Source of the DNA: Laetmonice hystrix | Lineage: Eukaryota | Assembly (NCBI GenBank): GCA_965235115.1 | Contig: OZ249437.1 | Span: 7,626,001-7,690,000, forward strand | DNA: 64,000 nt | Reading direction: 5' to 3' | Shown here: positions 24,042-64,000 of the stretch, piece by piece | Layout of the letters: every line of letters begins with the position of its first letter | Numbering within the stretch: position 1 is the first letter of the stretch | Notes under the pieces: generated by a model | Database searches by the model: none | What the model was told of the DNA's origin: nothing | What the model saw: the letters and a program-made list of their open reading frames with translations, nothing else | Translations under genes and position numbers: made by a program

Positions 24042-24779
24042 TTAAGATGGTCCTTCCTCGACTTCCATCTCTGCCATTTCTTCCTCGGCTGCAGGCTGAG
24101 CAGGAGGGTCAGGTCCAGGCAGATGGGTGGAGATCACTTCTAACAGACTGTCTATCTGCTCCTCCGTCAGTCTCTCCTCGCTCTCCTCAATGATCAATTG
24201 GATTTCAACAGCAGTTGTAGGACGCTGGTTCAACAACTGCATCTTTTCTGCCTTCGTCAGCTTGAAGGGCTGCAAGGCCTGCAAAAAATGCAATTGCTGC
24301 TATGGTATATCTACAAATTTGACTTATGAACTACATTGCAGACTAAAATTTCTGATTAAAACTAATTGAACTTTCAAGTTCATTAAAATTGACTGGACTT
24401 TGCTTGTGAAAAGGACCGTGAAGTTTGAAACAATTGGCAAGTAACTTCCACATGACTACTGATACTTGCTTGCCCATACACAAACACTAGGTAAAAACAA
24501 TGTAGCCCCATTTGAGACTTTACACACAAAAAAAAGCATTTTCTGATTCATTTACTGTCAACTTACTTGTAAAAACTTGGCAATGATGTCTTCCGACTGC
24601 AGACTGCATGGCATACGTTCCAGATATTTGAGAGTGGAGTAGGCAACAGTCGCTAGATTCTGGTGATGTTTACTTGGGCGCTTTGATTCCTTTGATAAAG
24701 ATACGGCTTTTAGCTCCTGAAGCAGCGTAAAGACTTCGTAATTGCTCAGCATGGAGGCTGATTCATCAATGATCTCCAT
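24042..24779 (-). CDS. CRCP: RNA polymerase III subunit RPC9 / CGRP receptor component protein, 149 aa
   Basis: Exons 24779-24567 and 24278-24042, phase 0. [20 protein letters not shown]...[13 protein letters not shown]...[38 protein letters not shown] is the Rpb4/RPC9 signature. Confidence 0.93.
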
Positions 24780-31700: not shown

Positions 31701-34700
31701 GTCCATGCACACACCTGTATGGCGATCTCCAGGTTCAAAATAATAGTCTTCAAGATATCCATCATTGAAACGTTACTCGGGTCCCACACACCTGTTGTGA
31801 CAGTCAACCATTCCGGGACAGTGAACAGATTATACAAAATAATGCACTTGCATGAAAGAGTGCAATATAAAAGTAAATTCTAGTTTTATTTTTATTTTGA
31901 CCAGAATGACCAGCTATATGTATGAACATGTTTTCTGAGTTTCCTTTTTTAATACACCATATAAGATAGAATGTATAGAAAGCTGACCTGGCCTATCGAA
32001 GAGTATTCCCCTGCCGTCTGAGTCCCTCTGTGGTAAGATCTGAGAGATGCCTTGACCCAAGGACTCAGTGATGGTGGCTGGGTGCATGTCATTAAAAATA
32101 TCGTACTCAGTACGGATCTTGTAGTAAGCAACCAGTAACTCGTACGCCCGGTCGTAGTCAAACTTACGGGCTCGAAGAAACCTCAGCAGGAAGGAGTCGT
32201 CCGTCCGACAGTGCAGACCTGTTCATGGTAAAGACATCCATGAAAAATATAATGGCAATAAACGCCCCTCACACCCACACACAAAAATCTCCCGGTCCAG
32301 AAAAAAAATTGCTGACCCCCCTACATCAAATGATGCATTCTGGGACATCTTTTGCATAAAATATGACCTTGTTTTGGGATGGAGATATCGGGGGGTTTCC
32401 AAGTGTCCGGACCCCCCCCCCCCTTGAATAAATTACTATATTAAGGACATATTTGTAAAAAAAAATTAAAATTAAAAAAATAAAAAAGAAGGTGTGTTGG
32501 CTCACACTTACATGTATTACCAATTAAATCGGAAACAGGGATAGACATATAGGGGTATTGCTCACGAGGGAAGTAAGTTCATATACGTCGTAGGATTTAT
32601 TTCTGAGAGTACAGATGAACCAAGTTGACTGACATATTTCTCGGAACCAAGTCGAAGGGAACTAAGTTAGGTGACTCACATACATATTTCTGGGAGTACA
32701 GACAAACTTAGGTGACCGACATTTTTCTCGGCGTCTGGTGACCAACATAATTAAATATTCGATAGGAGCACGGGACTTCCAGGAATGGGCATAGAGGTAA
32801 GCCAATGAGAATGAGACACGTAGGAGGTAAGGTAAGCCAATGAGAAAGAGGCAGGTAGGAGGTAAGGTAAGCCAATGAGAAAGAGGCACGCAAGAAGAGG
32901 GGATTTTTACCCCGGAGACAGACAGGTATAAGTAGTCAGGACTTAACGGAAAAGGGGGATAGTGCGGCCTCATCTGAGAGAGAAATGCGTGAAGGGAGTT
33001 AACAGGAGAGTTCCCGCTAGGGAGCTTGTGCGCGAGTTAAATGCTATTTGAGTATGGGGACGGATGGAGTATGGTACGCGTTCAGAAGTTATTGTGGAAA
33101 TAGACAACACTCGTGGAGGAGACGTGGAGTGTTATGTGCCAACTTGGATGATGTTCATCAATATAAGGAGTTACCTACTCAGTGTGGAGGATGTTGATTA
33201 ATAAAGGATTGAACCGGATTCCTGGAGTGTTATCCATCTCACCCGAATCCAGCGAAGCTACCAGAGCTAGCTCACCCCTATCAAGACTCTGGAACTTGAT
33301 TGGGGCAGACCTCTCGCACTAGTAACGCAATACCAAACGGACTAAGTTACAACCCCCGATAGCTATATCGAGATATATATCGCGAGGCCATAAACCACTC
33401 CAACACAAAGGTGTGCGTGTAAAATACATTATTTTAACCAAAGGAAACCTTTATATTTCCACACAAAATGTCCCAAGATTGCATTATTCGATGTCTTTTT
33501 TTTTATTTCCCAGATCAGCATGGCCTTAAATGGTTATCTCTGAAGTAGGTCTACCTAAACTTCGGAAACCCCCCTTAACAAAACCCTGGATACGCCACTG
33601 GTACGTGTCAAGGGCCATTCACACTAAGCAGAACTTTTTTGTCGTATGAACTTTTTCGTCGTACGAACTTCATAAGGAATTTTCGACGTTCGGAGGTGAT
33701 CGTAAAAACGACATTTTTGGTTACAAACGCCATTCACACTACTGCTTGCGAATTCGCAAGCAGTCGTGCGACCTCTTACAAACCTGGTTCCCAATGCTGC
33801 AATAATTCGCAAAGCTTACGAACTTCGTACAAACTAGAGTTCGTGACAAAAATCGGGCCAGTGTGAATTGCACTTTACCTGAGGCTGCGGCAGGTCTGAC
33901 AGGTAACTTTCTCATTGGTATTCATGTTTATGAGTTTGGTAGTATAGGTCTGACAGGTAACTTCTCATTGGTATTCATGTTTATGAGTTTGGTGGTAGGC
34001 CTACATAGAGTTGGTCTGGAGCCAAGTATTTCGTGATTCATTTGAATAGTCAATGCATATTTTGTTCAGACAATTATATAGGCCAAGACAACAAGCAAAC
34101 AAAGAAGTCACAATAAAAGAGAAACTAAAAAATAAGCTCTTGTTGGCATGGACTTTAAAAGGATGTCGTTCAATTACTTTGTTGATAGCAAAGGGCGACT
34201 GGCCAACGATTTCCTTCCACGCTACTTGCGCCGAATCCTAATTCTTCCTGCCTGCTCGGCTATTCGTGCAGGTCTATAATTTACACGCTCTTTTTGAGGG
34301 TTATACTTCCTTCATTGCAGCTACGATCTCACCGTATATAATAATATACAAATATTGGATGGCGGCGAGTCCACTATACAGTTTACGGGACGAAGAAAAG
34401 CGATAATGGACGAGGCGAAGCCGAGTCCATTATCGCTTTTCAGAGTCCCGTAAACTGTATAGTAGACGAGCTGCCATCCAACACTTGCTATATTATACAC
34501 CTATAGAGGTCTATATAGGGCCTAAGTAAAATATTGATAATCCCATATATAAATAAAGTCGAGAACACCCGCTTATGAAAATTATGTAGGTTAAACTTTA
34601 ATGAACACATTTTCTGTAACCATGGTCAATGTGACAATAATGGGGTACATTTGACGCATGCGCAATGGGAATTTCCAGTCAAATCCGCAAGGCGGCAGCA

Positions 34701-35819
34701 CCTGCAAGTCAGTCCTTGCTGCAGTACGTTAGCATAAGGTTAGATAGGACGACGAAATGCTAATGTGCTGTAGGATGACCTAGCCTTATCATTACTAAAT
34801 AATATTAACTCTTATGGACTAAAGTGAATGAAAGAAGTCTAAAAATTGCCATACCTCTTTAGAACAAATGTCGGTATGGCAACCAGCCACAGATTAGCAG
34901 ATATCAGCCTATCTAATTCTATGCTAAAATGTCTCCTGCTGAACCGCTTGCACAGTGCTGCCGCCATGCGGAAAACGCGGCGTCAAGGTACCCCATTTAT
35001 TGGACACATTAACTTTAGAACCCCATTAACTAGTTACTATAGTTAAATTCATGTTATCTTATCCATCTTATCATCTTATCATCTAGAATTAGCCTGGGCA
35101 GCCGGGCAGGACTGCTCTTATCATTTAGATCTACTTTGACGTCGTCTCTATGGTTTCCAGAGCGAACCGTTCAATATCGTATTTTACCATCCAATATCAA
35201 AATTTTCGGGACGGTCACGTCGTACAAATGGACCAATCAGATTGCTTAGCTGGGCCAGGTGTATAATATTGTCGTTTTTAGGCCTGTGTCCGATTTTCTA
35301 GGGCGGTTATAAATTGATGTCTCTTTTTGCTTTATTCATAGTTATTATCTTGAAATGATCAGCGCATTTCCCCCGTATCATCCTCATCACCGCCTCCAAT
35401 TGACTGAATCAATAAAGAAATATTGTCGCCCGGGCCAACGAATTACCTGTCCGACAGAGCGTACACCAACCATGCAATACCCGCTCATCCTGTCTGTCGT
35501 ATAGCATACCTTTATCGTCTGATTGTCAATATATCAGTTAGACGTATAGTTGCTGTAGGTCGGTGCTTTCTTACGGGGTCTCCGGTGTCCTCCCCCAGTC
35601 AAACTGAGATTTCTCCATCCATGACCCTTGCTGTTGCCGTTGCGTACGATCCCTGATCCCCAATCCCGATCCCCTCGTATACTCACCCGGGTGTGCGTTC
35701 ACCATGTCTCGGAGTGCCTGGATGTCCCGAGTTCGCCATTCTGGCTTCTCATTCAATTCCTGGCGTGCCTTCTCCAAAGATTTCTGGCTCAAAGTGCATT
35801 CGTACGGCTTGTCTGACAT
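28748..35819 (-). CDS. CRAL-TRIO lipid-binding protein (alpha-tocopherol transfer protein/clavesin-like), ~308 aa
   Basis: Exons 35819-35687, 32218-31988, 31791-31715, 31509-31393, 30889-30779, 30428-30321, 28897-28748, all phase-consistent. Motifs [27 protein letters not shown]...[18 protein letters not shown] and the C-terminal GSYKKLVVD* (typical GSF/Y-RKL-x-D end of invertebrate TTPA-like proteins). An upstream in-frame ATG at 35873 is possible. Confidence 0.9.
29316..29934. mobile_element. Aged mariner-like MITE (~620 bp, long imperfect TIRs)
   Basis: CAGGGTGCCTCACAAAGGCAATCCATATTCAAAGGCTTAACACGGCCAAAC vs the reverse complement of the right end, CAGAGTGTCTCCAAAAAGGTAATCGATATTCAAAGGGTTAACATGGCCAAAC. 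TA present on the right only. Confidence 0.7.
30599..30660. repeat. A/G-rich low-complexity tract
   Basis: GAAGAAGAAAAAGAAAAAAAGGAGAAAG... within CRAL-TRIO intron 5. Confidence 0.85.
32513..33351 (+). mobile_element. Probable solo LTR
   Basis: U3-like short repeats, three AGCCAATGAGA boxes (~32800-32880), TATA-like GTATAAG (~32926), AATAAA (33200) and a ...TTACA end at 33351. The left boundary and TSD are not confirmed. Confidence 0.5.
33611..33874. mobile_element. PIF/Harbinger-like MITE
   Basis: AGGGCCATTCACACT...AGTGTGAATTGCACT imperfect TIR with TCA/TTA flanks. Confidence 0.55.
34355..34481. repeat. Long palindrome with central GAGGCGAAGCCGAG
   Basis: ~55-bp arms (TGGATGGC...CTATACAGTTTACGGGAC...AAAAGCGATAATGGAC) and their near-perfect reverse complement. 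Confidence 0.9.
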
Positions 35820-36808
35820 CTTTTTCGGTGTTTCCTTGGAACCTTGCCGCTCAGTGTAATATGGAGCTGCCACTCTGCAGGGTCGTAAGTGGAGTTACAG
35901 ATTCATTAACCAAGCAACAAGCCGATTAGTATCAGACATAGAATATGAGATATTTAAAAAACTGAACTGCAGATATCAAGTACATGTATTAAGTATAGCA
36001 GATAACTGAATCAAAATTCATTTGGTTATCACTATATAATTATGTTTATTACATGCGCATTCTATCTTTCAGTGCCATTCAGGGGGTGCCATACGGTGGT
36101 CCGTGTTCCCTGCGGCCTGATTTGAGTGTACACGTTTCAGGGTGACGTGACGTTAACTAACACTTAACGGGATGCCATGGCGCATGAATACGGCACTACA
36201 TCAGGCATCTCGTTACTTTAGCGCCGTGAAGGACCCTCATTCCGCTGTAAGGATTCCGGGCGGCCGAATAAAAATAAATAAAAGTAAAAAGAAAAGAAAA
36301 CGAAAAGTTTCCGAATGTTCACGTTAACATGGCTCAGTGAAAGAACGCCGATTTTCTGAGAAGTCCACACCGACTGGGTCGAACCGAGGTTTATTCTTGA
36401 AGATAATGCAACTGTTGAGTTCGGCTCGGGCCGCAAGCAAACTCGGATTTGAAAGTATAGGCTTATAGAAGACTAAGCTATAATGTTTAACGCATTTTCT
36501 AAAGTTGCACTACTGAGGGAGGGGATAATGTCATTGTTGACCAATCATAATACAATATAGTTACCGTGGAGCTATCTATCACCGTTACGTGTATTTAACG
36601 GGCTTGCCATACAACTTTCACCGTTCTCGCGGGCGGGCAGGTCAAACAAGTTTACTGTGCCATGCACTCATGCGAGGAAATACCTCATTTCTGGACACGG
36701 CTAAACGACCCCTTTCTCACCTGTTTCTGACCTATTTTCTTCGTTTCTTTAAAGTAGAATTTTTCCACAACTCCATTATTCTGATCATTCACTTTCTCGG
36801 AAGCATAA

Positions 36809-40313: not shown

Positions 40314-43300
40314 TCATTTAATCACAGCCTCCGCAACACGAAGGCTCCACTCCTGACGTTCATTGCCCGGAAGAATATGGTGGGCAACCTGAAACAGGGG
40401 GAAAAGGGGTTATTGAGAAATAATCATTTCCTGAATCATAACTTTCAATAAATAAACATTTAAGTTATGTCATATTTTGTTTTCACGATTTGTTTTCTAT
40501 ATACATTTGTATGCAGGGAGACAGCACTATTGTGTGGCCAAAGGCTGGTACATGTACAGCTATTGGCATCAATTAAAACCAACCAAACTCTAACTGAATC
40601 TCTAATAATTCATACCTTGGCTGTTTTGGCTGGCACATCAATGGTATAATCGAGATGGTCCCGCTGGCTTACACAGTTCTTACTTCTACTGCAGTCGACA
40701 CTGATGGTCACCATGCTCCGAGACTGTTATAATACAATAAACACATGATTAGGATAATGAATCAATCCTCAAATACACTTAATCCACTATTAATCCAGGC
40801 CCATACCTAGCAGCTGCCCTCTCCAATCCCGGCCAGTAATTCAGGAAAACTTCAATTTTTTCCCTTTTAATTTGATAGAGTATGCTTTAATGCCAAATCT
40901 TAGACAGAACACCGTGTACTCTTTATTACATATTCTTGTCATCTTCAATTCTACTAATTTATCTAAGTCTTGAGCACTATATTATACTCCTGGTTCTCTC
41001 ATTACTGACATGTTGGGATAGGTCGTACCTTATTCTCGATGACAATGCAGGCACGGAAGTCGGTCATGTAAATGTGCAGGAAGAGGTCCTTCATGTTTTT
41101 AACCCTGGTCACTTCGCCCTACAAAGGTAAGACAAAATGTCACTACAGACAGTCATACTCAAAATCAGGATAGTGATGCTCTGGTTCATATCCTAGCGTG
41201 GTAACACTCAAACCTGATCTCGGGCAGCAACACTTTAAACCATATCTCAGAGTGGTGACACTCAAACCAGACCTTGGGTAGGGACACTTTAAACCATATC
41301 TCAGAGTGGTGACACTCAAACCAGACCTTGGGTAGCGTAGGGACACTTTAAACCATATCTCTGAGTGGTGACACTCAAACCAGACTTTGGGCAGGGACAC
41401 TTTAAACCATATCTTGGGCAGTGACACTTTAAACCATATTTCAATGCCATATACCACACCTTTAAGTCTATTTCAATGGCATTCCAATTCAGATCTCAGT
41501 TCTTAATCAGATTAATTACGCGATAACATGCAGCTCTACTTAGTCTTAGGTATTTAATCTTAGCTAGCTTTAGTGACTGAGTTAAGTGTGGGGTAAACTT
41601 CACCTTGTTGATAGTGGCCTCACTCAGGGCCCGTTCCATCCGGCTGCCTCCAGGACCAAGTTCAATGATCTTCATATTAGGGTTGCAGTCTTCCGCGTAG
41701 ACTTCCACTATAAACGGCACTGCCTAAAATTGATAACCAAGGGCGTCAACACTTGACATCTGACCAGATTCAAAGATGTATGATACTGACAATCCACAAC
41801 AATCCTTGACCTAAATAAGCACTCTATTATACCAAGGAATTAATGACGTTATTCTATGCCATAAGTAGGCTGAGATACGAAAGTACATGCCAAATAAATA
41901 AGCATCCAGTTTGTATCCGGTGCAAATTTCAAGATTTATGTTGAGCATACCTCGTCCATGACGAGTCCCTTGTTGTAGCCCATACTACTCAAGGTCACCC
42001 AGAGGTCATCCGTGTCACCCATGTTGTCCTCAGCCTCCATTTGGTTCAGGGTTAGGAACCCAGCCCGAGTCATCTCTCCATTTTTCAGTTCTACATTTTC
42101 TGTGATTATGGAATAAAAATAAATATTTTACTTTCATTACTACATGACACATTGACAGTAATGGTTCATTCATACTCCATGTATATGTCACTTTTCAACC
42201 AATAAACTTCACTCTGAAAGTTTAGAGGGATGACACAAAGTCAGAACCAGGTGTCAGGGTGGTCATAGCCTGTTTACTCAGTAACTGAAACTGTGACTGC
42301 AGCAGTTGGCTGAGAACTACATCCTCAGAACAAACTATAGTACCAAATTCTAGATATGGGACGTAGTGCTAGCAGATTCTTAGTAACTGCTTCAGACATT
42401 CTTCCTGGGACTGGACCCTAAAACTTGATGGGAGCACCATATACATGGGTATTACTATAGAATAACCTACAATACAAAGGTGTTGAAAAATGAAGGAGCT
42501 GTAATTTTTTAGTAATTACTCAGGACCTTCAGATATATCTGTGAGCATGCTTGTATCGATATAACACGTTCAATACTCTCTGGTAGAAATTGCGCAAACT
42601 TTCAAACTTGGCTCATGCAAGCGCGGCATTCTTTCAAACATCGATCCATGTAATTTAAGGTCATTACTTGGAACCCCCTGTCCTATACCTCACCCTCTGT
42701 GTAACCATTCATTAAAGTGAATTATGCCTAAACGAGGACCCAGCAGGTGAGTGATGACAAGTGGGCAGACAACCCCAAGTGGATCAGTGTAATGACAATA
42801 GAAACCACCTCCGGGAGGTGTTCTTGCTTACCTCCAATGTAAAACGCAGGTTGAACGAGAGGGTAAGGCATTAGGACAGGTACGAGTCAGAGAGGTAACA
42901 GTGTGTAACGTCCAGAACAGATGGTATTTATTTGTGAAGGTATCAAAGTGTATACAATCTGTCCCTTTTAACCTACTTGCCCTGGAATTTTTACAGCAGG
43001 AATTCAAGCACATGCTGCTATCAGGGTCAAGGAACAGAAAGTTGTTTTTTTAAAACATTACAAAAGGCGTAACACCTGGGAAGTGACATGTTGTTGCCGA
43101 CAAGTTGTCACTGAAGTGGGGTACCTTACCTTCCACGACTTCCCATTCCTCATCCGCCACCTCCTCCCCACTGGTCCGTAGGTTGAACCAGTTGAACTCA
43201 TCCCGACTGAGCAGGCCGTTTCCGTCAAGGTCACACACCTCGAACACGTCAGTTAGCACTTCCCTAACGCAATCAGAACACTTTATTGAACAACTAGACT

Positions 43301-45369
43301 AAAGGTAGGCAGAGAGTGGAAGAAATGTTGAACAGGCCTTCCTCCTAACTCTAACTAAACCTAAACCTAACTAAGTATCCTTAACATTCATGGAACTGTC
43401 CATAAACAGAGAAGTCTTTTTAAAGGGAGAATTTTAACTAAAACTTCTGTCAGAGCAGAAGAAAGATACACAAATATCAGACAAATGTTGTCTTGAAAGA
43501 CTTGAACTGTTTGTTGACACAGATTGTTAGAAACCAAAAAAAGATGAAGTTAAAGGTTTGACTCACTTGAAAGCTTTGGTCAGGACAAACTGATCGTCCT
43601 TGTCTTTCTTAACGAGTTTTGTCTCGACCCTGGCATCAGTTTTCCGCCGACGGAAGCGGCATCCAGTGTTCAGGGGCATGAGGATATACCGGCCTTTCTC
43701 TAGGTCACACCTTACACAATACCGCTACAAATATAACATCCGCTTTGTCAATGAACAGACACGGGTGGATTCCGTGAGAGCTGTCAGGGAGTATAGGAAC
43801 TTCTCCCGACCTACGGAGTCAATATTTCTAGTGTTTCAAAGCAGTCCAAGTTGTAACCCCCTTGTTTAAAGTGTTCCGTTCTGGATACCCTGTTGTCCCA
43901 AATTCTCCATTCCCCCTGTATATTTATTGCTGTAACATGCAAACATTAGGATCAATCACCCCTTTCAAGTCTCTCTGTTCGGTGAGTGTCACCAGGATGT
44001 TTCCATCTTCATTCGGACGTTCCCGCAGCACTAACAGTGCTGTTTCCCGCGGTGCGGCTCCAACTTCACGGCCACTATTCATGTCACCTGTCATTATTGT
44101 ACAAATATTAACCACAGCTCCAACTTCATGGCCACTATTCATGTCACCTGTCATTATTGTACAAATATTAACCACAGCTCCAACTTCATGGCCACTATTC
44201 ATGTCAGCTGTCATTATTGTACAAATATTAACCACAGCTCCAACTTCATGGCCACTATTCATGTCACCTGTCATTATTGTACAAATATTAACCACAGCTC
44301 CAACTTCATGGCCACTATTCATGTCACCTGTCATTATTGTACAAATATTAACCACAGCTCCAACTTCATGGCCACTATTCATGTCACCTGTCATTATTGT
44401 ACAAATATTAACCACAGCTCCAACTTCATGGCCACTATTCATGTCACCTGTCATTATTGTACAAATATTAACCACAGCTCCAACTTCATGGCCACTATTC
44501 ATGTCACCTGTCATTATTGTACAAATATTAACCACAGCTCCAACTTCATGGCCACTATTCATGTCACCTGTCATTATTGTACAAATATTAACCACAGCTC
44601 CAACTTCATGGCCACTATTCATGTCACCTGTCATTATTGTACAAATATTAACCACAGCTCCAACTTCATGGCCACTATTCATGTCACCTGTCATTATTGT
44701 ACAAATATTAACCAAAGCTCTGACTTCGCAGCTACTGTTCATATCACCTGTCATAATTGTACAAATATTAACCCCAGCTCTGACTTCACTATGAAATCAA
44801 CAATTTATTGACTAAGGTTGAACTTACCAGCTGTGCCGAGAGAGAGCGGCTCAATGGTGATCCACACTGACGTATCTTTGGACAGATGGAGTGAATACTG
44901 ATGGGACACTATAGTACCGTCCTCCTCAAAGAAAAAGCACCCTTTGCTGTGGGTCAAGGCCCAATCCTGAAAACAAACAAGTTCCAAAGCATGTATGTAA
45001 AACATGTGGATTTTTTATGTTTAATATGTCTGGTCAGCCATAGGCAGGAACAGACCCCAGCGCAAAACGCTGTGAAGGATGCCTATCAGTTATTAAATAA
45101 TCTATAATAAAAATAAAACTATGGACCCGTGACCTAGCCCCTGGTAGGCCTGGGCCCCCGAGTAGTTAGCCCTCCTCTTCTCTTGGCGCTCCTGTGTCTG
45201 GTCTATGGATTTTCTGTTAAAATAATGTTTACTGTTGGTTTTTCTAAGTACAGTACCGAGCAAAAACTTCATGTTACCTTAAGCCTTTTGGGTTCTGGAA
45301 GTTTGATTTTCTTTAGAGCCACAGGTGACTTTGTCCGTTCCTTGGGATGAGAAGAGGACTTGGAATCAT
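40314..45369 (-). CDS. EFCAB7: EF-hand calcium-binding domain-containing protein 7, conserved C-terminal exons
   Basis: Exons 45369-45278, 44966-44828, 44087(or up to 44747)-43960, 43724-43567, 43263-43130, 42099-41951, 41723-41604, 41118-41029, 40723-40616, 40388-40314, all phase-consistent. Matches vertebrate EFCAB7 motifs SKGCFFFEEDG..SHQY, ETAL, NTGCRF, DVFEVCDLDGNGLLS...FNLRTSGE, DLWVTLSSMGYNK, PFIVEVYAE, SKNC and NERQEW. Confidence 0.93.
41175..41440. repeat. ~54-bp intronic minisatellite (27-bp halves)
   Basis: GTGACACTCAAACCAGACCTTGGGTAGGGACACTTTAAACCATATCTCAGAGTG, repeated about 4-5 times. Confidence 0.9.
44055..44795. repeat. 60-bp minisatellite (~12 units) spanning an EFCAB7 3' splice site
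   Basis: Minus-strand unit TGGTTAATATTTGTACAATAATGACAG|GTGACATGAATAGTGGCCATGAAGTTGGAGCTG; successive 60-base lines of the listing are essentially identical. Confidence 0.97.
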
Positions 45370-47081: not shown

Positions 47082-50000
47082 CTGTCTCCGAATCTTTCGT
47101 CATATCGCGTTCTCTCGACTTACGAGGCCGGGGTTTAGGTACGTCATTGTCATTTTCGCCTGAAAAAGAGTTTTCTGAATATCTAGTAAGCAAACTGTTA
47201 GCAGCACACAAAACACACACTCTTATTTCAGAGATCTCTGATCTCTTCTTGTTTTCCTGACCAGAAATTAAGCCAAAAAATCTCGCAAAGTGTGGTGGTT
47301 TTTTTTCCAGAATCATGTATTTTATTCAATGGCTACACATAAGTCTGTCCTTTCAGCCGGCCAGTTCATCACAAACCACACAACTGGCGTCTTCTATTCT
47401 CGCACACATACCAGTAATGTGTTATGTATTTCTTTAAAGACAAAATCAATTTCTAATTAAAATATCATAATTAGACATAATAAAAACAGTCTGTGAAATT
47501 GCGCAGAAACCTTTTAAGTGTCTCACGGGAAAGTGCAATACAGTGTGTGACCTTCCTAACATGTAATCTTCTGTAAACGAATGGGAAGAGGGTGGGAGAA
47601 ACAACGGGATATCTTCAGGTTGGCCTTTGTACTCGTCATTTCACACCGCAACATCATGAAATTTTACTGCATGGCTTAAAAAAACGTTATGTGCCCTATA
47701 TGTTACAGTGTATCCTGTTACAGTGTATCCGGTACAAATCCTACAACAGTACACAGCACTTGTTAACACCACAGTCAAATCTTTCAATTTCTCAAACCGA
47801 AGACGAGTTTACTATCCAGGACATTACCGGTACACAATTGGTGAAACATTATATTCTGACCTTCCTTATGTTTGTTTCCTTGTCAGTAAATGTCATATTC
47901 TTGTGTCGGTATCACGCCTTGGCCTTGAACTGATAACCGTTCATTTAGTAAGGTTTGGATGGGTTCTACGTTATTGCATTCCTGCCATTTGATAAGTTTG
48001 TAGATAGGGTCATTTATACGTCTATTAGAGCTTGACTCACTTCCAACATGACATATGATCTGCTTATATTTCAATGTCATGGTGCTTGCCCAGTAATAGT
48101 CACTGTCTGGGTATGTCCCATCTTCGGACCACTGAGAACTTCAAGTACAAGTACCAGCAATGGGGCATATACAGTCACTTTTAAAAGCCAATACTGATAG
48201 GGAAAAACCTAACAATAATATTTGGTTTTAAACTAAATAAATAAATCAAATAAATAAAACCTCCAGTCCCCACGACTGTGGTGTGATGGTCTGTATGTTG
48301 CGTGTAGATACATCTTGCGTATGTATGTCTAAAATGTAATCTATTATATAACGGGACACCATCTCTGCGGACAAGGTCCCCATCTTCATCCCAGTTCCAT
48401 GCCATCTCTTTCCCATGATGCTCTCATGAAGTCGTCGAGTTGTTGTCCGTGTCAGAAGTCAATGTCCTAAACACACGACACAACACCTCTGTTAACGACA
48501 ACGTCGCAATGCTTTCCCTGCCCTAGTCCGAGTTTAACACCAGTATTTATAAATGGATTTAAGTTAAGGTTTTCCTTATAACTGGGTATTTTTCTGTTTG
48601 AAATTACGAGTGATTCTAAATAACAAAATTGCGGGAAATAAACATCTAAGCGTGGAATTCAGATTTTCACAGAATGTGCCAAGATGGTACCTAAATTACT
48701 AATATAGAATCATCCGTACACGTACTAGAAGACCAACAATTTCAATGCCCTTGAAGTAAGTTCCCATGAACAGCGGTCAAGTAATGAAAGCAGGAATACT
48801 TAAACGTTAGACTGTTTCAGAAAGATTCAGTGCAGGAGGACCACACGTGGTTTCAAACAAAGTGGAAGAACAGAAAAGTACGGATACTGGGCACAACACT
48901 AACCAGGTCAGTGATAACCAACGTCAAGGCCTTATACAACACTAACCAGGTCGGTGATAACCAACGTCAAGACCTTATACAACACTAACCAGGTCAGTGA
49001 TAACCAACGTCAAGGCCTTATACAACATTAACCAGGTCAGTGATAACCAACGTCAAGGCCTTATACAACACTAACCAGGTCAGTGATAACCAACGTCAAG
49101 GCCTTATACAACACTAACCAGGTCGGTGATAACCAACGTCAAGGCCTTATACAACACTAACCAGGTCAGTGATAACCAACGTCAAGCCACTAACCAGGTC
49201 GGTGATAACCAACGTCAAGGCCTTATACAACACTAACCAGGTTGGTGATAACCAACGTCAAGGCCTTATACAACACTAACCAGGTCGGTGATAACCAACA
49301 TCAAGGCCTTATACAACACTAACCAGGTCGGTGATAACCAACGTCAAGGCCTTATACAACACTAACCAGGTCAGTGATAACCAACGTCAAGGCCTTATAC
49401 AACACTAACCAGGTTGGTGATAACCAACGTCAAGGCCTTATACAACACTAACCAGGTCAGTGATAACCAACGTCAAGGCCTTATACAACACTAACCAGGT
49501 CGGTGATAACCAACGTCAAGGCCTTATACAACACTAACCAGGTCGGTGATAACCAACGTCAAGGCCTTATACAACACTAACCAGGTCAGTGATAACCAAC
49601 GTCAAGGCCTTATACAACACTAACCAGGTCAGTGATAACCAACGTCAAGGCCTTATACAACACTAACCAGGTCAGTGATAACCAACGTCAAGGCCTTATA
49701 CAACACTAACCAGGTCAGTGATAACCAACGTCAAGGCCTTATACAACACTAACCAGGTCAGTGATAACCAACGTCAAGGCAGGGGTGGAAATTAAAGTTT
49801 TTAGGAACTAGACAGCCGGGCTAGTAAAGCAAAAAATCAACTAGCCCGGATGAAAAATTATTAGCCCACATGATGGAAACGTCTGATGCCCGATTCTGTT
49901 TTGCAATAAATTAATCCCAGTCAGGCCTATCTCCAGAATATGCTACTCGCCAACCGGGCATGTGTTCTGTGAATGTCTAGTCGCCCGAGCTCGAATTCTG

Positions 50001-53000
50001 TCGCCTCGGTCGACCGGTCGACTCCAAATGCCACCCCTGCAAGGCCTTATACAACACTAACCAGGTCAGTGATAACCAACGTCAAGGCCTTATACAACAC
50101 TAACCAGGTCAGTGATAACCAACGTCAAGGCCTTATACAACACTAACCAGGTTGGTGATAACCAACGTCAAGGCCTTATACAACACTAACCAGGTCGGTG
50201 ATAACCAATGTCAAGGCCTTATACAACACTAACCAGGTCGGTGATAACCAACGTCAAGGCCTTATACAACACTAACCAGGTCGGTGATAACCAACGTCAA
50301 GGCCTTATACAACACTAACCAGGTCAGTGATAACCAACGTCAAGGCCTTATACAACACTAACCAGGTCAGTGACAACGTCAAGGCCTTATACAACACTAA
50401 CCAGGTCGGTGATAACCAACGTCAAGGCCTTATACAACACTAACCAGGTCGGTGATAACCAACGTCAAGGCCTTATACAACACTAACCAGGTCAGTGATA
50501 ACCAACGTCAAGGCCTTATACAACACTAACCAGGTCAGTGATAACCAATGTCAAGGCCTTATACAACACTAACCAGGTCGGTGATAACCAACGTCAAGGC
50601 CTTATACAACACTAACCAGGTCGGTGATAACCAACGTCAAGGCCTTATATGTACAACACTAACCAGGTCGGTGATAACCAAAGTCAAGGCCTTATACAAC
50701 ACTAACCAGGTCGGTGATAACCAACGTCAAGCCACTAACCAGGTCGGTGATAACCAACGTCAAGCCACTAACCAGGTCGGTGATAACCAACGTCAAGGCC
50801 TTATACAACACTAACCAGGTCGGTGATAACCAACGTCAAGGCCTTATACAACACTAACCAGGTCAGTGATAACCAAAGTCAAGGCCTTATACAACACTAA
50901 CCAGGTCAGTGATAACCAACGTCAAGACCTTATACAACACTAACCAGGTCAGTGATAACCAACGTCAAGGCCTTATACAACACTAACCAGGTCAGTGATA
51001 ACCAACGTCAAGGCCTTATACAACACTAACCAGGTCAGTGATAACCAACGTAAAGGCCTTATACAACACTAACCAGGTCGGTGATAACCAATGTCAAGGC
51101 CTTATACAACACTAACCAGGCCGGTGATAACCAACGTCAAGGCCTTATACAACACTAACCAGGTCGGTGATAACCAACGTCAAGGCCTTATACAACACCA
51201 ACCAGGTTGGTGATAACCAACGTCAAGGCCTTATACAACACTAACCAGGTCAGTGATAACCAACGTCAAGGCCTTATACAACACTAACCAGGTCAGTGAT
51301 AACCAACGTCAAGGCCTTATACAACACTAACCAGGTTGGTGATAACCAACGTCAAGGCCTTATACAACACTAACCAGGTCGGTGATAACCAATGTCAAGG
51401 CCTTATACAACACTAACCAGGTCGGTGATAACCAACGTCAAGGCCTTATACAACACTAACCAGGTCAGTGATAACCAACGTCAAGGCCTTATACAACACT
51501 AACCAGGTCGGTGATAACCAACGTCAAGGCCTTATACAACACTAACCAGGTCAGTGACAACGTCAAGGCCTTATACAACACTAACCAGGTCGGTGATAAC
51601 CAACGTCAAGACCTTATACAACACTAACCAGGTCGGTGATAACCAATGTCAAGGCCTTATACAACACTAACCAGGTCAGTGATAACCAACGTCAAGGCCT
51701 TATACAACACTAACCAGGTCAGTGATAACCAACGTCAAGGCCTTATACAACACTAACCAGGTCGGTGATAACCAACGTCAAGGCCTTATACAACACTAAC
51801 CAGGTCAGTGATAACCAACGTCAAGGCCTTATACAACACTAACCAGGTCGGTGATAACCAACGTCAAGGCCTTATACAACACTAACCAGGTTGGTGATAA
51901 CCAACGTCAAGGCCTTATACAACACTAACCAGGTCGGTGATAACCAATGTCAAGGCCTTATACAACACTAACCAGGTCGGTGATAACCAACGTCAAGGCC
52001 TTATACAACACTAACCAGGTCAGTGATAACCAACGTCAAGGCCTTATACAACACTAACCAGGTCGGTGATAACCAACGTCAAGGCCTTATACAACACTAA
52101 CCAGGTCAGTGACAACGTCAAGGCCTTATACAACACTAACCAGGTCGGTGATAACCAACGTCAAGACCTTATACAACACTAACCAGGTCGGTGATAACCA
52201 ATGTCAAGGCCTTATACAACACTAACCAGGTCAGTGATAACCAACGTCAAGGCCTTATACAACACTAACCAGGTCAGTGATAACCAACGTCAAGGCCTTA
52301 TACAACACTAACCAGGTCGGTGATAACCAACGTCAAGGCCTTATACAACACTAACCAGGTCGGTGATAACCAACGTCAAGGCCTTATACAACACTAACCA
52401 GGTCGGTGATAACCAATGTCAAGGCCTTATACAACACTAACCAGGTCAGTGATAACCAACGTCAAGGCCTTATACAACACTAACCAGGTCGGTGATAACC
52501 AATGTCAAGGCCTTATACAACACTAACCAGGTCGGTGATAACCAACGTCAAGGCCTTATACAAAGTGACAACCGACTGGAAATTTTCTAAAAGGTACATT
52601 AGTCCTGTGTAGTATTTACCCGACCAGTAATACTTGACTTATTTAATATTTTATTGAAGTAAAAATTTATATTTAACAACAAATCCGAGATTATTTAAGT
52701 CGAGTCTCTTGCAATCTAAGTGAGTACTAGAACTTGTTCTGTTTGTGTCACTGTCGGTGATATCACAGTTCATGTTGTCGCTAATATATTTGTCTGAAGG
52801 TCTTTGTATTTTGGTGCTTACACTGGTAACACAATAACTCTATGTCCACTCTTTACATTTTTCGTACAACAAAAACAGAGATGGCATACAGGTCTATGAA
52901 AGCAGCTGCACACAAAATGGTGCAAAGGCGGAACACTGATCTGAAACTTGTTCTGATCTTCAGATCACTGAATATTCTGATCTTCAGATCACTGAATGCC

Positions 53001-56000
53001 AATGTCCCGGTGGATTACTGATTAACTTCCATCATAAATCTTAGCAGAATCGTTCCATGAATTAACTCTATGAACACACTTGGGTTAGCAGGAAATGTTA
53101 AAAATGTTAATAAAATACAGCGATATTCTTACATTTGTTAACAGATCGACCTGATCTTAGGGACGTCTGAGATCCCATTCTGCTACCGCTCTCCACTATA
53201 AAAAAAACAACAGGGCACAGGTTTTCAAAACTTAAAGCTCCTGATTGGCTGGTCTATGCTCAGTAGTGTTAAGTTTACTGGTAAGCTTAAAGCTCCTGAT
53301 TGGCTGGTCTATGCTCAGTAGTGTTAAGTTTACTGGTAAGCTTAAAGCTCCTGATTGGCTGGTCTATGCTCAGTAGTGTTAAGTTTACTGGTAAGCTTAA
53401 AGCTCCTGATTGGCTGGTCTATGCTCAGTAGTGTTAAGTTTACTGGTAAGCTTAAAGCTCCTGATTGGCTGGTCTATGCTCAGTAGTGTTAAGTTTACTG
53501 GTAAGCTTAAAGCTCCTGATTGGCTGGTCCATGCTCAGTAGTGTTAAGTTTACTGGTAAGCTTAAAGCTCCTGATTGGCTGGTCCATGCTCAGTAGTGTT
53601 AAGTTTACTGGTAAGCTTAAAGCTCCTGATTGGCTAGTCCATGCTCAGTATAGTGTTAAGTTTACTGGTAAGCTTAAAGTTCCTGATTGGCTAGTCCATG
53701 CTCAGTATAGTGTTAAGTTTACTGGTAAGCTTAAGCAAGAACTGAAAATCTGACAAACCGGGCTGAGGTAACACAAGAAGCCAATCGAGCACAAGCTTCC
53801 AATTAGTAAAGAAAAATTCTAGATAATCATAAATTCTGAGTACAGCTATAATTAGAATTTATGTAGTTTAGTCAAACAAGGTACATGTACTTTTACTGAT
53901 CAGTGCTATAATAAAGATTCCCCCTTTCTCCAGAAGAATCGCAGGGATATAATTAATTTCCAAATGTTGATTCAAACAGCAAAAAGAACCAACTGAGCCG
54001 AGTTTAATCATAATTAATTTGCTAAAATCTGATGCATTTTTCAGTAAAAATACAAATGTGAGCAAAAGCATCACTCTACAAGCACCAAAACTCATTGACA
54101 CAGGACCCAGTAATGCAAGCACATGCTAAAATGTCATTACATGTACATGTATTTCCATTACAATATTTTTTCTCCCTAATATTACAATGGAGTCCAGATA
54201 TTCCGTTTGTGAAACTAGGTTTTATACACCCTGAGAAGTGTGCCCCACATAACAAAAGTGTGATACAAAGTGGTTGAATGAAGCGGTGAGATCGGCAAAC
54301 AGAAAATACATCCTCATCACCTGGTAATAAAGGTTTTGAGCCAATACGAAGCATACCATTCAAATTATCAAAAACTGGATTTGCCCACCACACTACATTA
54401 ATAATCTTCATTACAAAACATTAGTGCATTATAAAATAATTGCAAACCAGTAATATCCCCATCATGTTAGTTCCTGGACTTCTGCAAATATCAACTTTTC
54501 TTTCTCTTTTTCCATAGATATCACAATTATGAGAGAAAAGTCTTGATTAGTTCAGCAACTATTAATGAGACGATGAGGTAAAACACGTTGTAAACTACAA
54601 TAATCACTACTCTGATCTATAAAGCCTTGACCACAGTCTACCGTCCAACCGTGACGGCGGAACTACGGGGAATGCGCAATGATGGGGGCAGTCATCCACG
54701 TTATAAAAATCTCATGACAAGACTGAAACCAACTCTCAACAAACAAAAACATTCCAAAACGGGACATAACCAAAATACACGTGTCTTACAAAACATACAG
54801 ACCAGTGAGTGTGCTCATCAGAATGTTATAAAGTGAGTAATTTTGTTTGGGACCACTTTATACAGGTTAACGGTGGATTGGAGGCCCTATCACCACTACA
54901 TTACAGAAACCTTGAACAATCTTACCCTTTTTGGGTGAGGGGCGAGGCGTGCGCAAAGAAACCTGCGACCCTACAACTATATCGTCGTCGTCATCAGAGC
55001 CTGGGACACCTGTCAGGCCAGGAAGGATCGGTTAAAATGTTGTTAGAACCTCGTACTGGATGGTTCTGTCGTGTGAGGGTGGGGGTTGGGGGCACAGGGT
55101 GAGGCGATTTACCCCGACCAGGGTGAATGGGTAAAAGAACATTAGATGACAGTTCTAGATAATCCAAGCTACACCTACAAACAAGGTAGAATTCATGTAT
55201 GTACTTATAATTATATACTCTTCTGTTTGGTATGGATGTTGCTTTCAAAACTAATATCTAGAATACACCCTAAACGAAGGAAAGTTGCCTTTAAACCAAG
55301 TTCCAAAAGGATATTTAGCGTGAAAGATCTTTTTAAACAAAAAACTTTAACCAAATAAATAAAGCCATATGGGATTGAAAAAAACGCTACCTCAGTCAAG
55401 GAGACTGATTGGAAGAGTTGGACACTTACAGCATGGATGTAGTTCCTAACCGACCTTTAGTTTAAGCCACCATAACACAACAATCCCTAAACCTTATAAA
55501 CTGAATTCCTGTGCTGGTACACATACCTTAAAAAAAAAACACCAAAAAAACATCATGATGGCTTACTTTTTTTGTCAGAACTTGGGGCCTCTGAGGGCTT
55601 CATCTCCAATTCACCTGAAACAGGAGCAGACGGTGTACACGACCGGAACGCTGAGACGACCATGCACTTGATGACCCCGACCATGCACTTGATGACCCAA
55701 CCATGAATTTGATGACCCCAACCTTGAACTTGATTTGATGATACGGCCTCACACAGAGGCAAAATTACCCGGTACTTATTTTATTACGAAAATAATATAG
55801 ACGACTAAAACAATGGGTTTATTACCTCTCGTCTGCCATACTTGTTTCAGATCTACATTTAGAGTACCCAGAGAAACCAATGTGAGAAAAGGGCAAGTAC
55901 CAGCAGGCAAAATAACACAGTGAGCAATGTGCTGTCACACTGGATGCTCCACTCCAATTCCAAACAAATTGTGTCAGTGCATTTCAATAAGTAAAATTTT

Positions 56001-61995: not shown

Positions 61996-63905
61996 TTGCC
62001 ACCTTGCTGCGAGGTTTTGGGGAGAAGTCTGATTTCTGCCTTTTTTCCCGTCTTTCCAAACGTTCATGTGCAACTTTTCTCACAGCATCTTGTGTATCCA
62101 ACATCATTCTGCAGAACTGCACAAAAAGGGAGAAAAATCTCTTATCATTATTCAAACTTTGGAAGTCTGCATTTTTAATAACCGACCAGTGATGAAATGT
62201 GATGGTAATATGACATCAAATTACCGATTCATGAAAACAATGGGAGTTAAATAATTTGGTCGAGAGTCTATTTCCTGAATTTATCATACATCTGAGCTAG
62301 TGAACTTTCTTTCTTTTTTTTTCATTACCTACCAGGGGTATTTACAGATATAATTACCAACTTTTTATAGTGAGTAGGGTATCTTTGTATCCAGTTAATA
62401 CTGATAATTTATTTTCAAAGTTTTACCACAGACATAAAGCACCGGCAACCTTTTCCATCATGGTATCACTTTAGAAGCAACAACAGATCACAATCTGGTG
62501 GATCTGCACAATATTAATGAGCATGCACTGATAATATGGGGAATTCAGTATGCATGTAAGGATATTACAAAATTCTTTTTTTCAAATTCTGTACTCTACA
62601 GTTACTCTGCCTTATAGCATCAAAAGGTTAATGAAATGCTAAGCTCAGTGCGACTATGTCTGATGGTCCCCCAGGCTAGTAGCTGCCCAAATCTTCATAA
62701 GACTAGCTAAACATTACTACATTGTAATACCTGATAGTACTGACGTAATTTATACAAATCTCTATTTTTGAAACAGCTGTGTGCAAATTTTCCTGGAAAG
62801 ATCTTCAATGAAAATTTCACATCCCCCCCCCATATTTTTCTTAGAAAACAAATATCCCAAATACACAATGTACCATTACTTTACCTCAAAATTTTACTGA
62901 CAAAACTAGAAAGGTTCACTGGTTCTTTCATTATCCACGTTTCAAGATCTACTGTCATTTCATTCTATAAGCACTCTTCCTCAAGATCCAGCTTTTCTGA
63001 AGCAGTAACCACTACAGTCTTAACATTTTGAAAGTAATTTTCCTTCTGTTTCAGTGACGACTGACATACTTTCAGCCAACAAAAAGCAAATCATACATCT
63101 TTGAAATTTCTTTAAAAACTGGCTGAAACAGCAAAACAAGTCTTCAGACATCCGCCCCTCCCTCCATTCAAACAAGATTTTTTAATGCCCTATCAACCCA
63201 AAACTTTTGAAGACATTTCTTTCTTTTTACACATAAGTTTTAGGTGGTGGTGAACATGGAACTAACAATTTGAACTGCACCTATCGAAACAGATGATAGC
63301 AAAATCTCATGCTCAAAGCAAAGGTTCAAAGAGAACTGACCACAATTTGTCACCAAAGTCATGCAAACAGAAATATATAGTTCATACCTTCTCATAGAGA
63401 AATCTTCCCTGGCAGAGACAGTTGGAGAAAAGTGAGTGAGTAAAAGTAGTGTCACATGCCCGTGCTAAGAGAAGCTACGATTTATGTGAGAATAGTGATG
63501 TAAAATTTGGTTGGCAAAACCACAGGTGTTTGCCGACATGCAGCATCAGGACAGCTGTGACCATAAGGCTTCAATTTTAAAATATGCATGTATTTTCTTT
63601 GGAGGTAATTCTTCATGAAATCTTTACGAGCTTCAAACAGAAAATCATCAAAAATGGAGCCCTTCAACTTAAATCTAGATTGTGGCTTAATAACATGGCA
63701 CTTAAACCTATTTTGAACATATCCTAAATAATAGGAACCAAGTGTGAAAGACCAACTTAAATTATTCCTTTAGGAAAGATTTCATGCATGTTTGGGAGAA
63801 AGTAAAAATGCCACCTACCTCCTCATAATCTAACTTCCCATCCCCATTCTCATCGACCTCGTCAATGATAGCTTGAACTTCACTCTTGCTCATCTTGTCA
63901 CCTCT
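61996..63905 (-). CDS. EFCAB7: EFCAB7 N-terminal EF-hand exons; gene continues beyond the right edge
   Basis: 63905-63819 RGDKMSKSEVQAIIDEVDENGDGKLDYEE and 62116-61996 FCRMMLDTQDAVRKVAHERLE... match the EFCAB7 RGEKMT.EEV..II...D.N.DGK.DY / FC segment. Phases are consistent. Confidence 0.85.
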
Positions 63906-64000
63906 CTGTCACACATCAAAAAGTAGAAAACAGGTAAACTTTCGCTCAGGTACTTTTCCCAACTCGAAATATAAAAAAAAGTCTGTAAGACAGACAACTG

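What the first reader, a model, noticed from the sequence alone, without database searches (positions are those of the whole stretch)
43960..44828. Splice-acceptor ladder: a 60-bp minisatellite creates 12 in-frame 3' splice sites in EFCAB7
The unit is the last 27 nt of an intron (TTAAT branch-like motif, ...ATGACAG) plus the first 33 nt of the next exon. After the phase-1 donor at 44828, acceptors recur every 60 nt from 44748 to 44088. All are phase-matched and the frame has no stop, so each choice adds or removes one 20-aa block (GDMNSGHEVGAVVNICTIMT). The last acceptor gives a near-canonical protein (...LGTAGDMNSGREVGAAPRETALLVL...). The first (80-nt intron) inserts 220 aa with 11 Cys/His-bearing repeats. 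A VNTR could therefore tune protein length through both allele copy number and acceptor choice, in a ciliary EVC/IQCE-complex Hedgehog regulator (function known from vertebrates). The upstream units are more diverged than the homogenised middle.
Basis: partly seen in the sequence, partly recalled or inferred. Interest (0 to 1): 0.85.

Follow-up and report, generated by a model that had tools for sequence, protein, structure and literature searches.

The report
Splice-junction minisatellite in EFCAB7 intron
A 60-bp tandem repeat has copied the end of an intron plus the start of the next exon of an EFCAB7-like gene twelve times, but the only RNA data available show the cell splicing to the last, original site, so the array is an intronic repeat of an already described kind ("mirage").

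Summary
A 60-bp x 12.2 minisatellite lies at 44057-44788 on the minus strand. Its unit is the last 27 nt of an intron plus the first 33 nt of the next exon of an EFCAB7-like gene. It gives 12 phase-matched AGs and one open frame.

The "ladder" reading is not supported. The one RNA data set available (run X4, contigs only) holds a spliced mRNA contig that joins 44828/9 directly to 44087. That is the last, exon-adjacent acceptor, so the whole array is a 740-nt intron. This isoform is colinear with EFCAB7 orthologues from many phyla, and none has an insert there.

Repeat-bearing RNA is present at about 1x per unit, roughly 2.5% of mRNA depth, as pre-mRNA would give. Minor use of the other AGs cannot be excluded.

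DNA k-mer depth supports about 8-13 units. It also shows that the second haplotype has a different unit composition, so the array is real and polymorphic. An in-frame, stop-free unit is expected by chance about 1 time in 6.

This is a "mirage", a splice-junction minisatellite. Such arrays are known from amphioxus genes, including acceptor-side cases, and from human F7, IFI6 and CBS, where regular splicing is kept. The scan already noted such arrays on other DNA of this genome.

The parts
44828..44966 (-). Exon A of the EFCAB7-like gene (calpain-CIII-like domain). It ends in phase 1 at 44828, with donor G|GTAAGT.
   Evidence: RNA contig of run X4 covers 44829-44968. Translation is DWALTH...LGTA. 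It aligns to orthologues.
44828..44828 (-). Heterozygous SNP at the last exon base: G/A on the coding strand, giving Gly or Ser at the junction codon, at position -1 of the donor.
   Evidence: C>T on the + strand in a contig of DNA run X3, and the single letter T between the two sides of the RNA joint in X4 (tables 3 and 5c).
44088..44827 (-). The 740-nt intron removed in the assembled mRNA. It contains the whole array.
   Evidence: Joint 44829 to 44087 in X4 contig 24, depth 39 (table 5). GT at 44827-44826, AG at 44089-44088.
44057..44788 (-). 60-bp minisatellite of 12.2 units. The unit is 27 nt of intron 3' end (TTAAT branch-like motif, weak pyrimidine tract, CAG) plus the first 33 nt of exon B.
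   Evidence: TRF; unit listing; unique in the genome; DNA unitig depth 7.6-12.8x of unique depth against 9.6-10 copies in the assembly.
44148..44749 (-). Eleven pseudo-acceptors, with AG ending at 44748, 44688 ... 44148. All are in frame, and each is followed by GT (CAG|GTGACA, an AG|GT proto-splice site).
   Evidence: None is joined to exon A in the RNA contig.
44088..44089 (-). Authentic acceptor AG, the last copy and the one next to the unique exon body.
   Evidence: RNA joint. The resulting protein is colinear with orthologues.
43960..44087 (-). Exon B (128 nt). Its first 33 nt are the exonic part of the repeat unit. Donor GGG|GTGATT.
   Evidence: X4 contig piece 43960-44087 and joint 43724 to 43960; translation.
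43567..43724 (-). Exon C (calpain-CIII-like, ...GRYILMPLNTGC...), used to identify the gene.
   Evidence: X4 contig. phmmer hits to EFCAB7-like proteins. The Atlas gives Calpain_III clusters.

Best explanation
This is a "mirage": a recently expanded, polymorphic minisatellite that arose by tandem duplication of a 60-bp segment. The segment straddles the 3' splice site between two exons of the calpain-CIII-like domain of an EFCAB7 orthologue. Each unit carries a full copy of the branch-like motif, a weak pyrimidine tract, the AG and 33 nt of exon. The cell nevertheless splices exon A to the last copy, the only one followed by the unique exon body and, 128 nt further on, the exon's 5' splice site. 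The other 11 AGs behave as silent or nearly silent pseudo-acceptors, and the array is simply part of a 740-nt intron. The choice of the distal site is most simply explained by exon definition. The acceptor has the poorest pyrimidine tract of the gene's known acceptors. It would therefore depend on pairing across the exon with the nearest downstream donor and on exonic sequence that only the last copy has. Shown: the array, the gene identity, the splice junction in the dominant mRNA, the real copy number and the haplotype difference. Inferred: the exon-definition reason for the choice, and the neutrality of the array.
For:: X4 contig 24 (1189 nt, depth 39) is spliced at five GT-AG introns. It joins 44829 (plus the allelic base 44828) to 44087. 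DNA runs X1-X3 show none of these joints, so it is RNA and not a retrocopy. One search also shows no X4 contig on 44748-44827 or on units 1-2. The only repeat RNA is one 90-nt unitig, which is the full 60-k-mer cycle of the inner unit, at depth 9.78. That is about 1 per unit, or about 2.5% of 39, the level expected of pre-mRNA; the last-acceptor protein is colinear with EFCAB7-like proteins of a hemichordate, nemertean, molluscs, annelid, echinoderm, priapulid, tunicate and amphioxus (42-55% identity). The junction falls in a short loop of variable length, and no orthologue has an insert; two relatives have the same phase-1 intron and no array; the repeat peptide has no homologue or family; the acceptor has 4/11 pyrimidines at -14..-4, against 7-9/11 in the five other RNA-supported acceptors; the depth of the repeat unitigs fits the assembled copy number. 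Literature: mirages at intron-exon boundaries, including the acceptor side (BflGb6), do not disturb regular splicing (PMC3087553, PMC3902484). In the donor-side cases F7, LMNB2 and PDGF only the authentic site is used, and in IFI6 and CBS also the two nearest pseudo-sites (PMC1557585).
Against: There is only one RNA data set, from one sample and of unknown tissue, available as contigs that drop rare variants. The RNA contig carries the non-reference allele at 44828, so it documents splicing of the other haplotype, whose array differs in composition. Exon definition alone does not explain why the penultimate AG (a 188-nt exon) loses to the last one. The repeat-bearing RNA at depth 9.78 could in part be isoforms that use upstream AGs.
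Confidence: 0.8

Rival explanations
1. One reading: several of the 12 AGs are used. This would give EFCAB7 isoforms differing by 20-aa blocks, with the repertoire set by VNTR allele length.
For: All 12 sites are phase-matched and stop-free. Inner sites are identical to the authentic one from -27 to +18 and beyond. RNA containing unit-to-unit junctions exists (90-nt unitig, depth 9.78). In IFI6 and CBS the two pseudo-donors nearest the authentic site are used (PMC1557585).
Against: The assembled mRNA uses only the last AG. No RNA contig covers unit 1-2 sequence, so the first and second AG are below detection. The complete 60-k-mer cycle requires molecules with at least two consecutive inner units, which pre-mRNA explains most simply. 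In-frame openness is expected by chance in about 1 of 6. The peptide is hydrophobic, has no homologue, and would sit inside a beta-sandwich loop that is 10-17 residues long in all orthologues.
Confidence: 0.1
2. Stepwise (recursive-like) removal. Every unit boundary reads CAG|GTGACA, a juxtaposed 3'/5' splice site. Exon A might therefore be spliced to an early AG, with the regenerated G|GTGACA donor re-spliced unit by unit or in jumps, ending in the same final mRNA.
For: AG|GT is present at all 12 boundaries. This gene uses donors without G at +5, namely GTGATT and GTGAAG. This is the AG|GT duplication logic of intron gain (Rogers model, cited in PMC3087553 and PMC4974935).
Against: No intermediate is seen. 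The same regenerated donor would also exist after the last AG, yet exon B is kept. 60-nt introns are far shorter than the 227-1030 nt introns seen in this gene. The final product is identical to that of direct splicing, so there is no positive evidence.
Confidence: 0.05
3. Assembly artefact: the array is an expansion or collapse error of the long-read assembly.
For: Identical 60-bp units are hard to assemble. Logan contigs cannot span the array.
Against: The depth of the repeat unitigs relative to unique flanks is 9.8x and 12.8x (X1), 7.6x and 10.9x (X2), and about 8x and 12x (X3). The assembly holds 9.6-10 copies of the same k-mers. Variant unitigs absent from the assembly, such as last-unit-type k-mers at 4.1x in both X1 and X2, point to a second haplotype with its own array.
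Confidence: 0.03

Closest known systems
[quoted passage not shown]
   Same: A tandem array whose unit spans a splice junction. BflGb6 duplicates the 3' end of an intron plus the 5' part of the exon, as here. Inner units are homogenised and edge units diverged. Haplotypes differ. Regular splicing is kept although the repeats carry AG/GT signals (PMC3087553, PMC3902484).
   Different: The organism differs: the EFCAB7 piece is only 45% identical to Branchiostoma and 53-55% to annelid, nemertean and gastropod proteins. The unit is 60 bp, against 150-160 bp in BflGb6. All 12 copies are in frame and stop-free.
Human minisatellites that reiterate a splice donor: F7 IVS7 (37 bp), IFI6/6-16 (12 nt), CBS IVS13, LMNB2, PDGF
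   Same: The first monomer spans the exon-intron border, so identical pseudo-sites follow the authentic site. The site next to the exon body is used, and at most the two nearest pseudo-sites as well. The VNTR is polymorphic (PMC1557585).
   Different: Those are donor-side arrays. Here the acceptor is reiterated, and the authentic site is the most downstream copy, a mirror image.
Tandem alternative acceptors (NAGNAG) and alternative 3' splice sites
   Same: Closely spaced in-frame AGs that could add or remove residues.
   Different: NAGNAG sites are 3 nt apart, share one branch point and are both used. Here the AGs are 60 nt apart, each with its own branch-like motif, and only one is seen in use. 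The description of NAGNAG sites is from my own knowledge, not from a tool.
[quoted passage not shown]
   Same: EF-hand exons plus calpain-CIII-like exons. PMC4631099 states that EFCAB7 has EF hands and two CIII domains. All full-length phmmer hits are named EFCAB7-like.
   Different: This is an invertebrate orthologue. Its role in the EVC/IQCE/Hedgehog context is known only from vertebrates and was not tested here.

Membership tests
Mirage / splice-junction minisatellite | Head-to-tail tandem array of minisatellite-size units | tested here: met
   TRF: period 60, 12.2 copies, 97% matches.
Mirage / splice-junction minisatellite | The unit contains both an intronic and an exonic part of one authentic splice junction, and the authentic junction is the terminal copy | tested here: met
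   The RNA joint puts the authentic AG at 44089-44088, inside the last unit. The exonic 33 nt code for the loop residues of the canonical protein. The intronic 13-mer is conserved at the same place in relative L010.
Mirage / splice-junction minisatellite | Regular splicing is kept and the duplicated sites are not used in the main transcript | tested here: met
   A single spliced contig uses the last acceptor. The limit is one RNA run, seen as contigs only.
Mirage / splice-junction minisatellite | Length or composition polymorphism between haplotypes | tested here: inconclusive
   Variant unitigs absent from the assembly at 1.4-4.1x depth indicate a different second haplotype. Copy numbers per haplotype cannot be read from contigs.
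EFCAB7 | Orthology by sequence to named EFCAB7 proteins over several exons | tested here: met
   Exon C hits EFCAB7-like proteins at E 4e-8 to 3e-4. The 276-aa spliced piece aligns colinearly at 42-55% identity.
EFCAB7 | EF-hand pairs plus calpain-CIII-like domains | tested here: met
   Pfam EF-hand matches on the exons at 63765-63908 and 43131-43262. Atlas neighbours of exon C are Calpain_III clusters. The architecture is as stated in PMC4631099.
EFCAB7 | Ciliary EVC-zone / Hedgehog function | not testable with these tools
   Known from vertebrates only.
Alternative tandem acceptors (functional ladder) | Two or more of the AGs joined to the upstream exon in mRNA | tested here: not met
   Only 44088 is joined to exon A in the RNA contig. 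Rare variants could be hidden.
Recursive splice sites | Juxtaposed 3' and 5' splice-site sequence (AG|GT) | tested here: met
   CAG|GTGACA at 11 of 12 boundaries and CAG|CTGACA at one.
Recursive splice sites | Splicing intermediates or lariats showing stepwise removal | not testable with these tools
   No raw reads or nascent RNA are available.

The most novel reading that the evidence does not exclude
In some tissue, or from the reference haplotype, the pseudo-acceptors nearest the authentic one are used at a meaningful level. EFCAB7 would then carry one or more 20-aa inserts in a CIII-domain loop, with a repertoire that depends on the VNTR allele. This would be an acceptor-side counterpart of the IFI6 and CBS donor ladders.
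Probability: 0.1. Interest if true: 0.5.

Novelty: new member of a known kind. Interest (0 to 1): 0.25.

Why it matters
The array is a clean natural experiment in 3' splice-site choice. It offers twelve near-identical branch/tract/AG modules 60 nt apart, all harmless to the reading frame, and the most distal one wins. That argues against simple first-come-first-served or 5'-to-3' scanning for acceptors in this animal. It favours recognition across the exon. It also adds a case of "mirages" outside cephalochordates, in a genome where the scan has seen them repeatedly. This bears on how minisatellites arise at splice junctions and on intron gain by AG|GT duplication. It does not, on present evidence, change the EFCAB7 protein.

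Tried and rejected
1. I searched the 5.8-billion-protein collection with the 290-aa array ORF, hoping for transcript-derived fragments that show a junction. No hit was found.

2. Pfam on the array ORF gave only sub-threshold noise.

3. I looked for relatives' DNA around exon C. P0003, the closest at 78% identity, had no DNA available. L008 holds exons C and D, but exons A and B lie beyond the 10-kb flank. L009 and L010 were informative.

4. The second run search, on 44660-44827, was inconclusive. X4 holds 2 of 13 words, the same share as DNA run X3. X3 carries the other haplotype there, so missing words may be allelic.

5. No run is on record as RNA. X4 was recognised as RNA only from its spliced contig.

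6. I checked whether the 55-bp array at 53231-53734 is a second mirage. It is not: it ends about 35 nt upstream of the nearest acceptor.

7. The assembly-expansion idea is rejected on k-mer depth.

8. I considered selection for an open frame and rejected it as unsupported, because chance gives about 0.13-0.19.

9. No structure or complex prediction was run. The loop position is inferred from the alignment only.

Full report
**The observation**

On the minus strand the window holds an exon that ends at 44828 (…GCTG|GTAAGT, phase 1). After 39 nt of unique intron comes a tandem array of 60-bp units reaching into the next exon. TRF reports it at 44057-44788: period 60, 12.2 copies, 97% matches, no indels.

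A script found the heptamer ATGACAG 12 times. The G of the AG lies at 44748, 44688 … 44088, always 60 nt apart. Joining 44828 to the base after any of these AGs gives a stop-free frame, with introns of 80 to 740 nt and 20 aa added per unit. Only one of the three frames of the unit is open.

Units 3-9 and 11 are identical. Unit 10 begins CTG instead of GTG, the last has G for A at +19, and the first two units are clearly diverged. The unit occurs nowhere else in the 627-Mb genome.

**Chance**

The repeat itself is far beyond chance, but the property that made it look designed is not. 33 of the 60 nt come from an exon and are open by descent. The other 27 nt stay open in 39% of mononucleotide shuffles, and 56% of 30-nt windows of the neighbouring intron are open in a given frame. 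With a 1/3 chance that a unit length is divisible by 3, roughly one such array in six would be an in-frame ladder.

The window is very rich in minisatellites, with at least ten arrays in 64 kb. One of them is a 3.7-kb array of 43-mers in an upstream intron of the same gene.

**The gene**

Exon translations give EF-hand matches. For exon C the Atlas neighbours are dominated by Calpain_III.

An exhaustive phmmer search with exon C returned 26 proteins. [quoted passage not shown] They come from Glandiceps, Lineus, Pomacea, Mizuhopecten, Lytechinus, Priapulus, Styela and Branchiostoma, and the Ridgeia protein is named only as an EF-hand domain protein.

EFCAB7 is described as EF hands plus two calpain-CIII-like domains (PMC4631099), which fits. 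The identities are 55% to Ridgeia, 53% to Lineus and Pomacea, and 45% to Branchiostoma. They suggest a lophotrochozoan-like animal and exclude amphioxus.

**What the RNA shows**

No run is on record as RNA. However, run X4 (58 Mb of contigs) contains a 1189-nt contig at depth 39 that lies on the window in six pieces joined at five GT-AG introns. The three DNA runs of the same sample show none of these joints. X4 is therefore a transcriptome, and the contig is not a retrocopy.

At the array the joint runs from 44829 to 44087, with one letter in between that replaces 44828. This corresponds to a heterozygous C>T (+ strand) also seen in DNA run X3 (tables 3, 5, 5c). The assembled mRNA thus uses the last acceptor, and the whole array is a 740-nt intron.

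The exons defined by the contig are 44966-44828, 44087-43960, 43724-43567, 43263-43130, 42099-41951 and 41723-41603. They translate without a stop.

**Is there any sign of the other acceptors?**

X4 has no contig on the unique intron start or on the diverged units 1-2 (tables 2 and 8). The first two acceptors are therefore below the assembler's threshold.

X4 does have one 90-nt unitig at depth 9.78, placed at 44070-44159. These include k-mers that run from the intronic part into an inner-type exonic part.

Such k-mers need molecules with at least two consecutive inner units. With about ten identical units, the depth is about 1 per unit, or some 2.5% of the mRNA depth. Unique introns at that level would not be assembled, and none is. 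Unspliced pre-mRNA explains this fully.

Minor isoforms from upstream AGs would give the same k-mers and cannot be excluded. A second run search on 44660-44827 was uninformative, because the RNA appears to come from the other haplotype.

**Comparison with orthologues**

The last-acceptor protein aligns colinearly with twelve EFCAB7-like proteins. The junction (…LGTA|G·DMNSGREVGAAPRE…) lies in a loop of variable length between two conserved strands (VW-I/L-T-x-x-P and P-V/I-D-T-A-L). No orthologue has an insert there or anything resembling the intron-derived peptide.

Two relatives for which DNA could be fetched (L009, L010) have a phase-1 intron at the same place, about 1.0 and 1.5 kb long, with no minisatellite at the boundary.

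In L010 the 13-mer GGTTAATATTTGT occurs exactly once in 20 kb, on the gene strand, about 45 nt upstream of exon B. This 13-mer is the core of the intronic part of the unit and includes the TTAAT motif. The local alignment extends to 20 of 21 positions, with a score about 4 sd above shuffles.

**Is the array real?**

Contigs cannot span the array, but the unitigs that represent it have 7.6-12.8 times the depth of the unique flanks in three DNA runs. The same k-mers occur 9.6-10 times in the assembly.

Some unitigs are single-copy or absent in the assembly yet occur at 1.4-4.1x. Last-unit-type k-mers with G at +19, for example, are at 4.1x in both X1 and X2. The second haplotype therefore carries an array of different composition, probably with several inner units identical to the authentic junction over at least 58 nt. 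The array is real and polymorphic. Exact copy numbers per haplotype remain unknown.

**Why the last site?**

This part is inference. The acceptor has only 4 pyrimidines in positions -14 to -4, against 7-9 in the five other RNA-supported acceptors of the gene. It should therefore depend on help from the exon.

Only the last copy is followed by the unique exon body and, 128 nt downstream, by the exon's donor. Under exon definition (established knowledge, summarised in PMC1557585), the acceptor nearest to the donor is the one paired with it.

First-come-first-served choice would favour the 80-nt intron, and that is not what is seen.

Every boundary reads CAG|GT, a proto-splice site. A stepwise route through these sites is conceivable but has no support.

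**What is known**

Minisatellites whose monomer spans an exon-intron border are documented. On the donor side the human examples are F7 IVS7, IFI6/6-16, CBS, LMNB2 and PDGF. There the authentic site is used, and in IFI6 and CBS also the two nearest pseudo-sites (PMC1557585).

An earlier follow-up note of this scan (s1-306512) pointed to the amphioxus term "mirages", and I checked the papers. Mirages duplicate either boundary. Globin BflGb6 duplicates the 3' end of an intron plus the 5' part of the exon. [quoted passage not shown]

The present array meets each of these features. The same scan noted recurrent splice-junction minisatellites on other pieces of this genome (s1-324846, s1-306512). 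I did not test those loci.

**Verdict**

The feature is real and nicely regular, but it is a new member of a known kind. The proposed protein-length ladder is not supported by the only RNA evidence available. The residual probability of meaningful use of pseudo-acceptors is about 0.1. Interest is 0.25.

Noticed in passing
window 44828 (also 42059, 43671): The RNA contig differs from the assembly at three exonic sites. At 44828 the change is G>A on the coding strand, at the last base of exon A, giving Gly>Ser and altering position -1 of the donor; it is also seen in DNA run X3. Sites 42059 and 43671 are third-codon-position, synonymous changes not seen in the three DNA contig sets. They look like alleles of the second haplotype rather than editing.
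   Followed up: partly
window 48893-52563: A 43-bp x 86 minisatellite (3.7 kb) lies in an upstream intron of the same gene. Overall there are at least 10 minisatellite arrays in 64 kb, so the genome is very rich in minisatellites.
   Followed up: no
window, minus strand, about 59440, 58960, 58290, 54990 and 53132-53197: Five short exon-like ORF pieces each encode an (M/V)GSQxSL(R)S motif. The one at 53132-53197 has AG and GT flanks. The same motif is repeated in the linker of the Sinanodonta EFCAB7-like protein P0022. They may be repeated or alternative cassette exons of the linker between the EF hands and the first CIII domain. No RNA evidence is available here.
   Followed up: partly
L010:8416-8428 and window 44101-44113 (and each unit): An intronic 13-mer, GGTTAATATTTGT, is conserved just upstream of exon B between this species and a relative whose exons are only about 50-58% identical at protein level. 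It may be a constrained branch-point or tract element.
   Followed up: partly
L010:8437-8472: In relative L010 two AGs 33 nt apart precede exon B, both in phase 1 and both in an open frame. The upstream one lines up with this window's acceptor, and the downstream one has the stronger pyrimidine tract. Which is used is unknown.
   Followed up: no
window 53231-53734: A 55-bp x 9.1 array ends about 35 nt upstream of the acceptor of the small GSQTSLRS exon. It is close to a splice junction but does not span one.
   Followed up: yes
window 846-1145 and 1677-1976; ORFs at 1167-1331 and 1998-2159: Two identical 149-bp x 2 arrays and two near-identical ORFs lie about 830 bp apart. This is a larger tandem duplication at the start of the window.
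   Followed up: no
window 15900-17400, 24045-24299, 31900-35900 (minus strand): Neighbouring genes by ORF content are an acid-sphingomyelinase-like phosphodiesterase, a CRCP/RPC9-like protein and a CRAL-TRIO domain protein. These names come from my own reading of the translations and were not searched.
   Followed up: no
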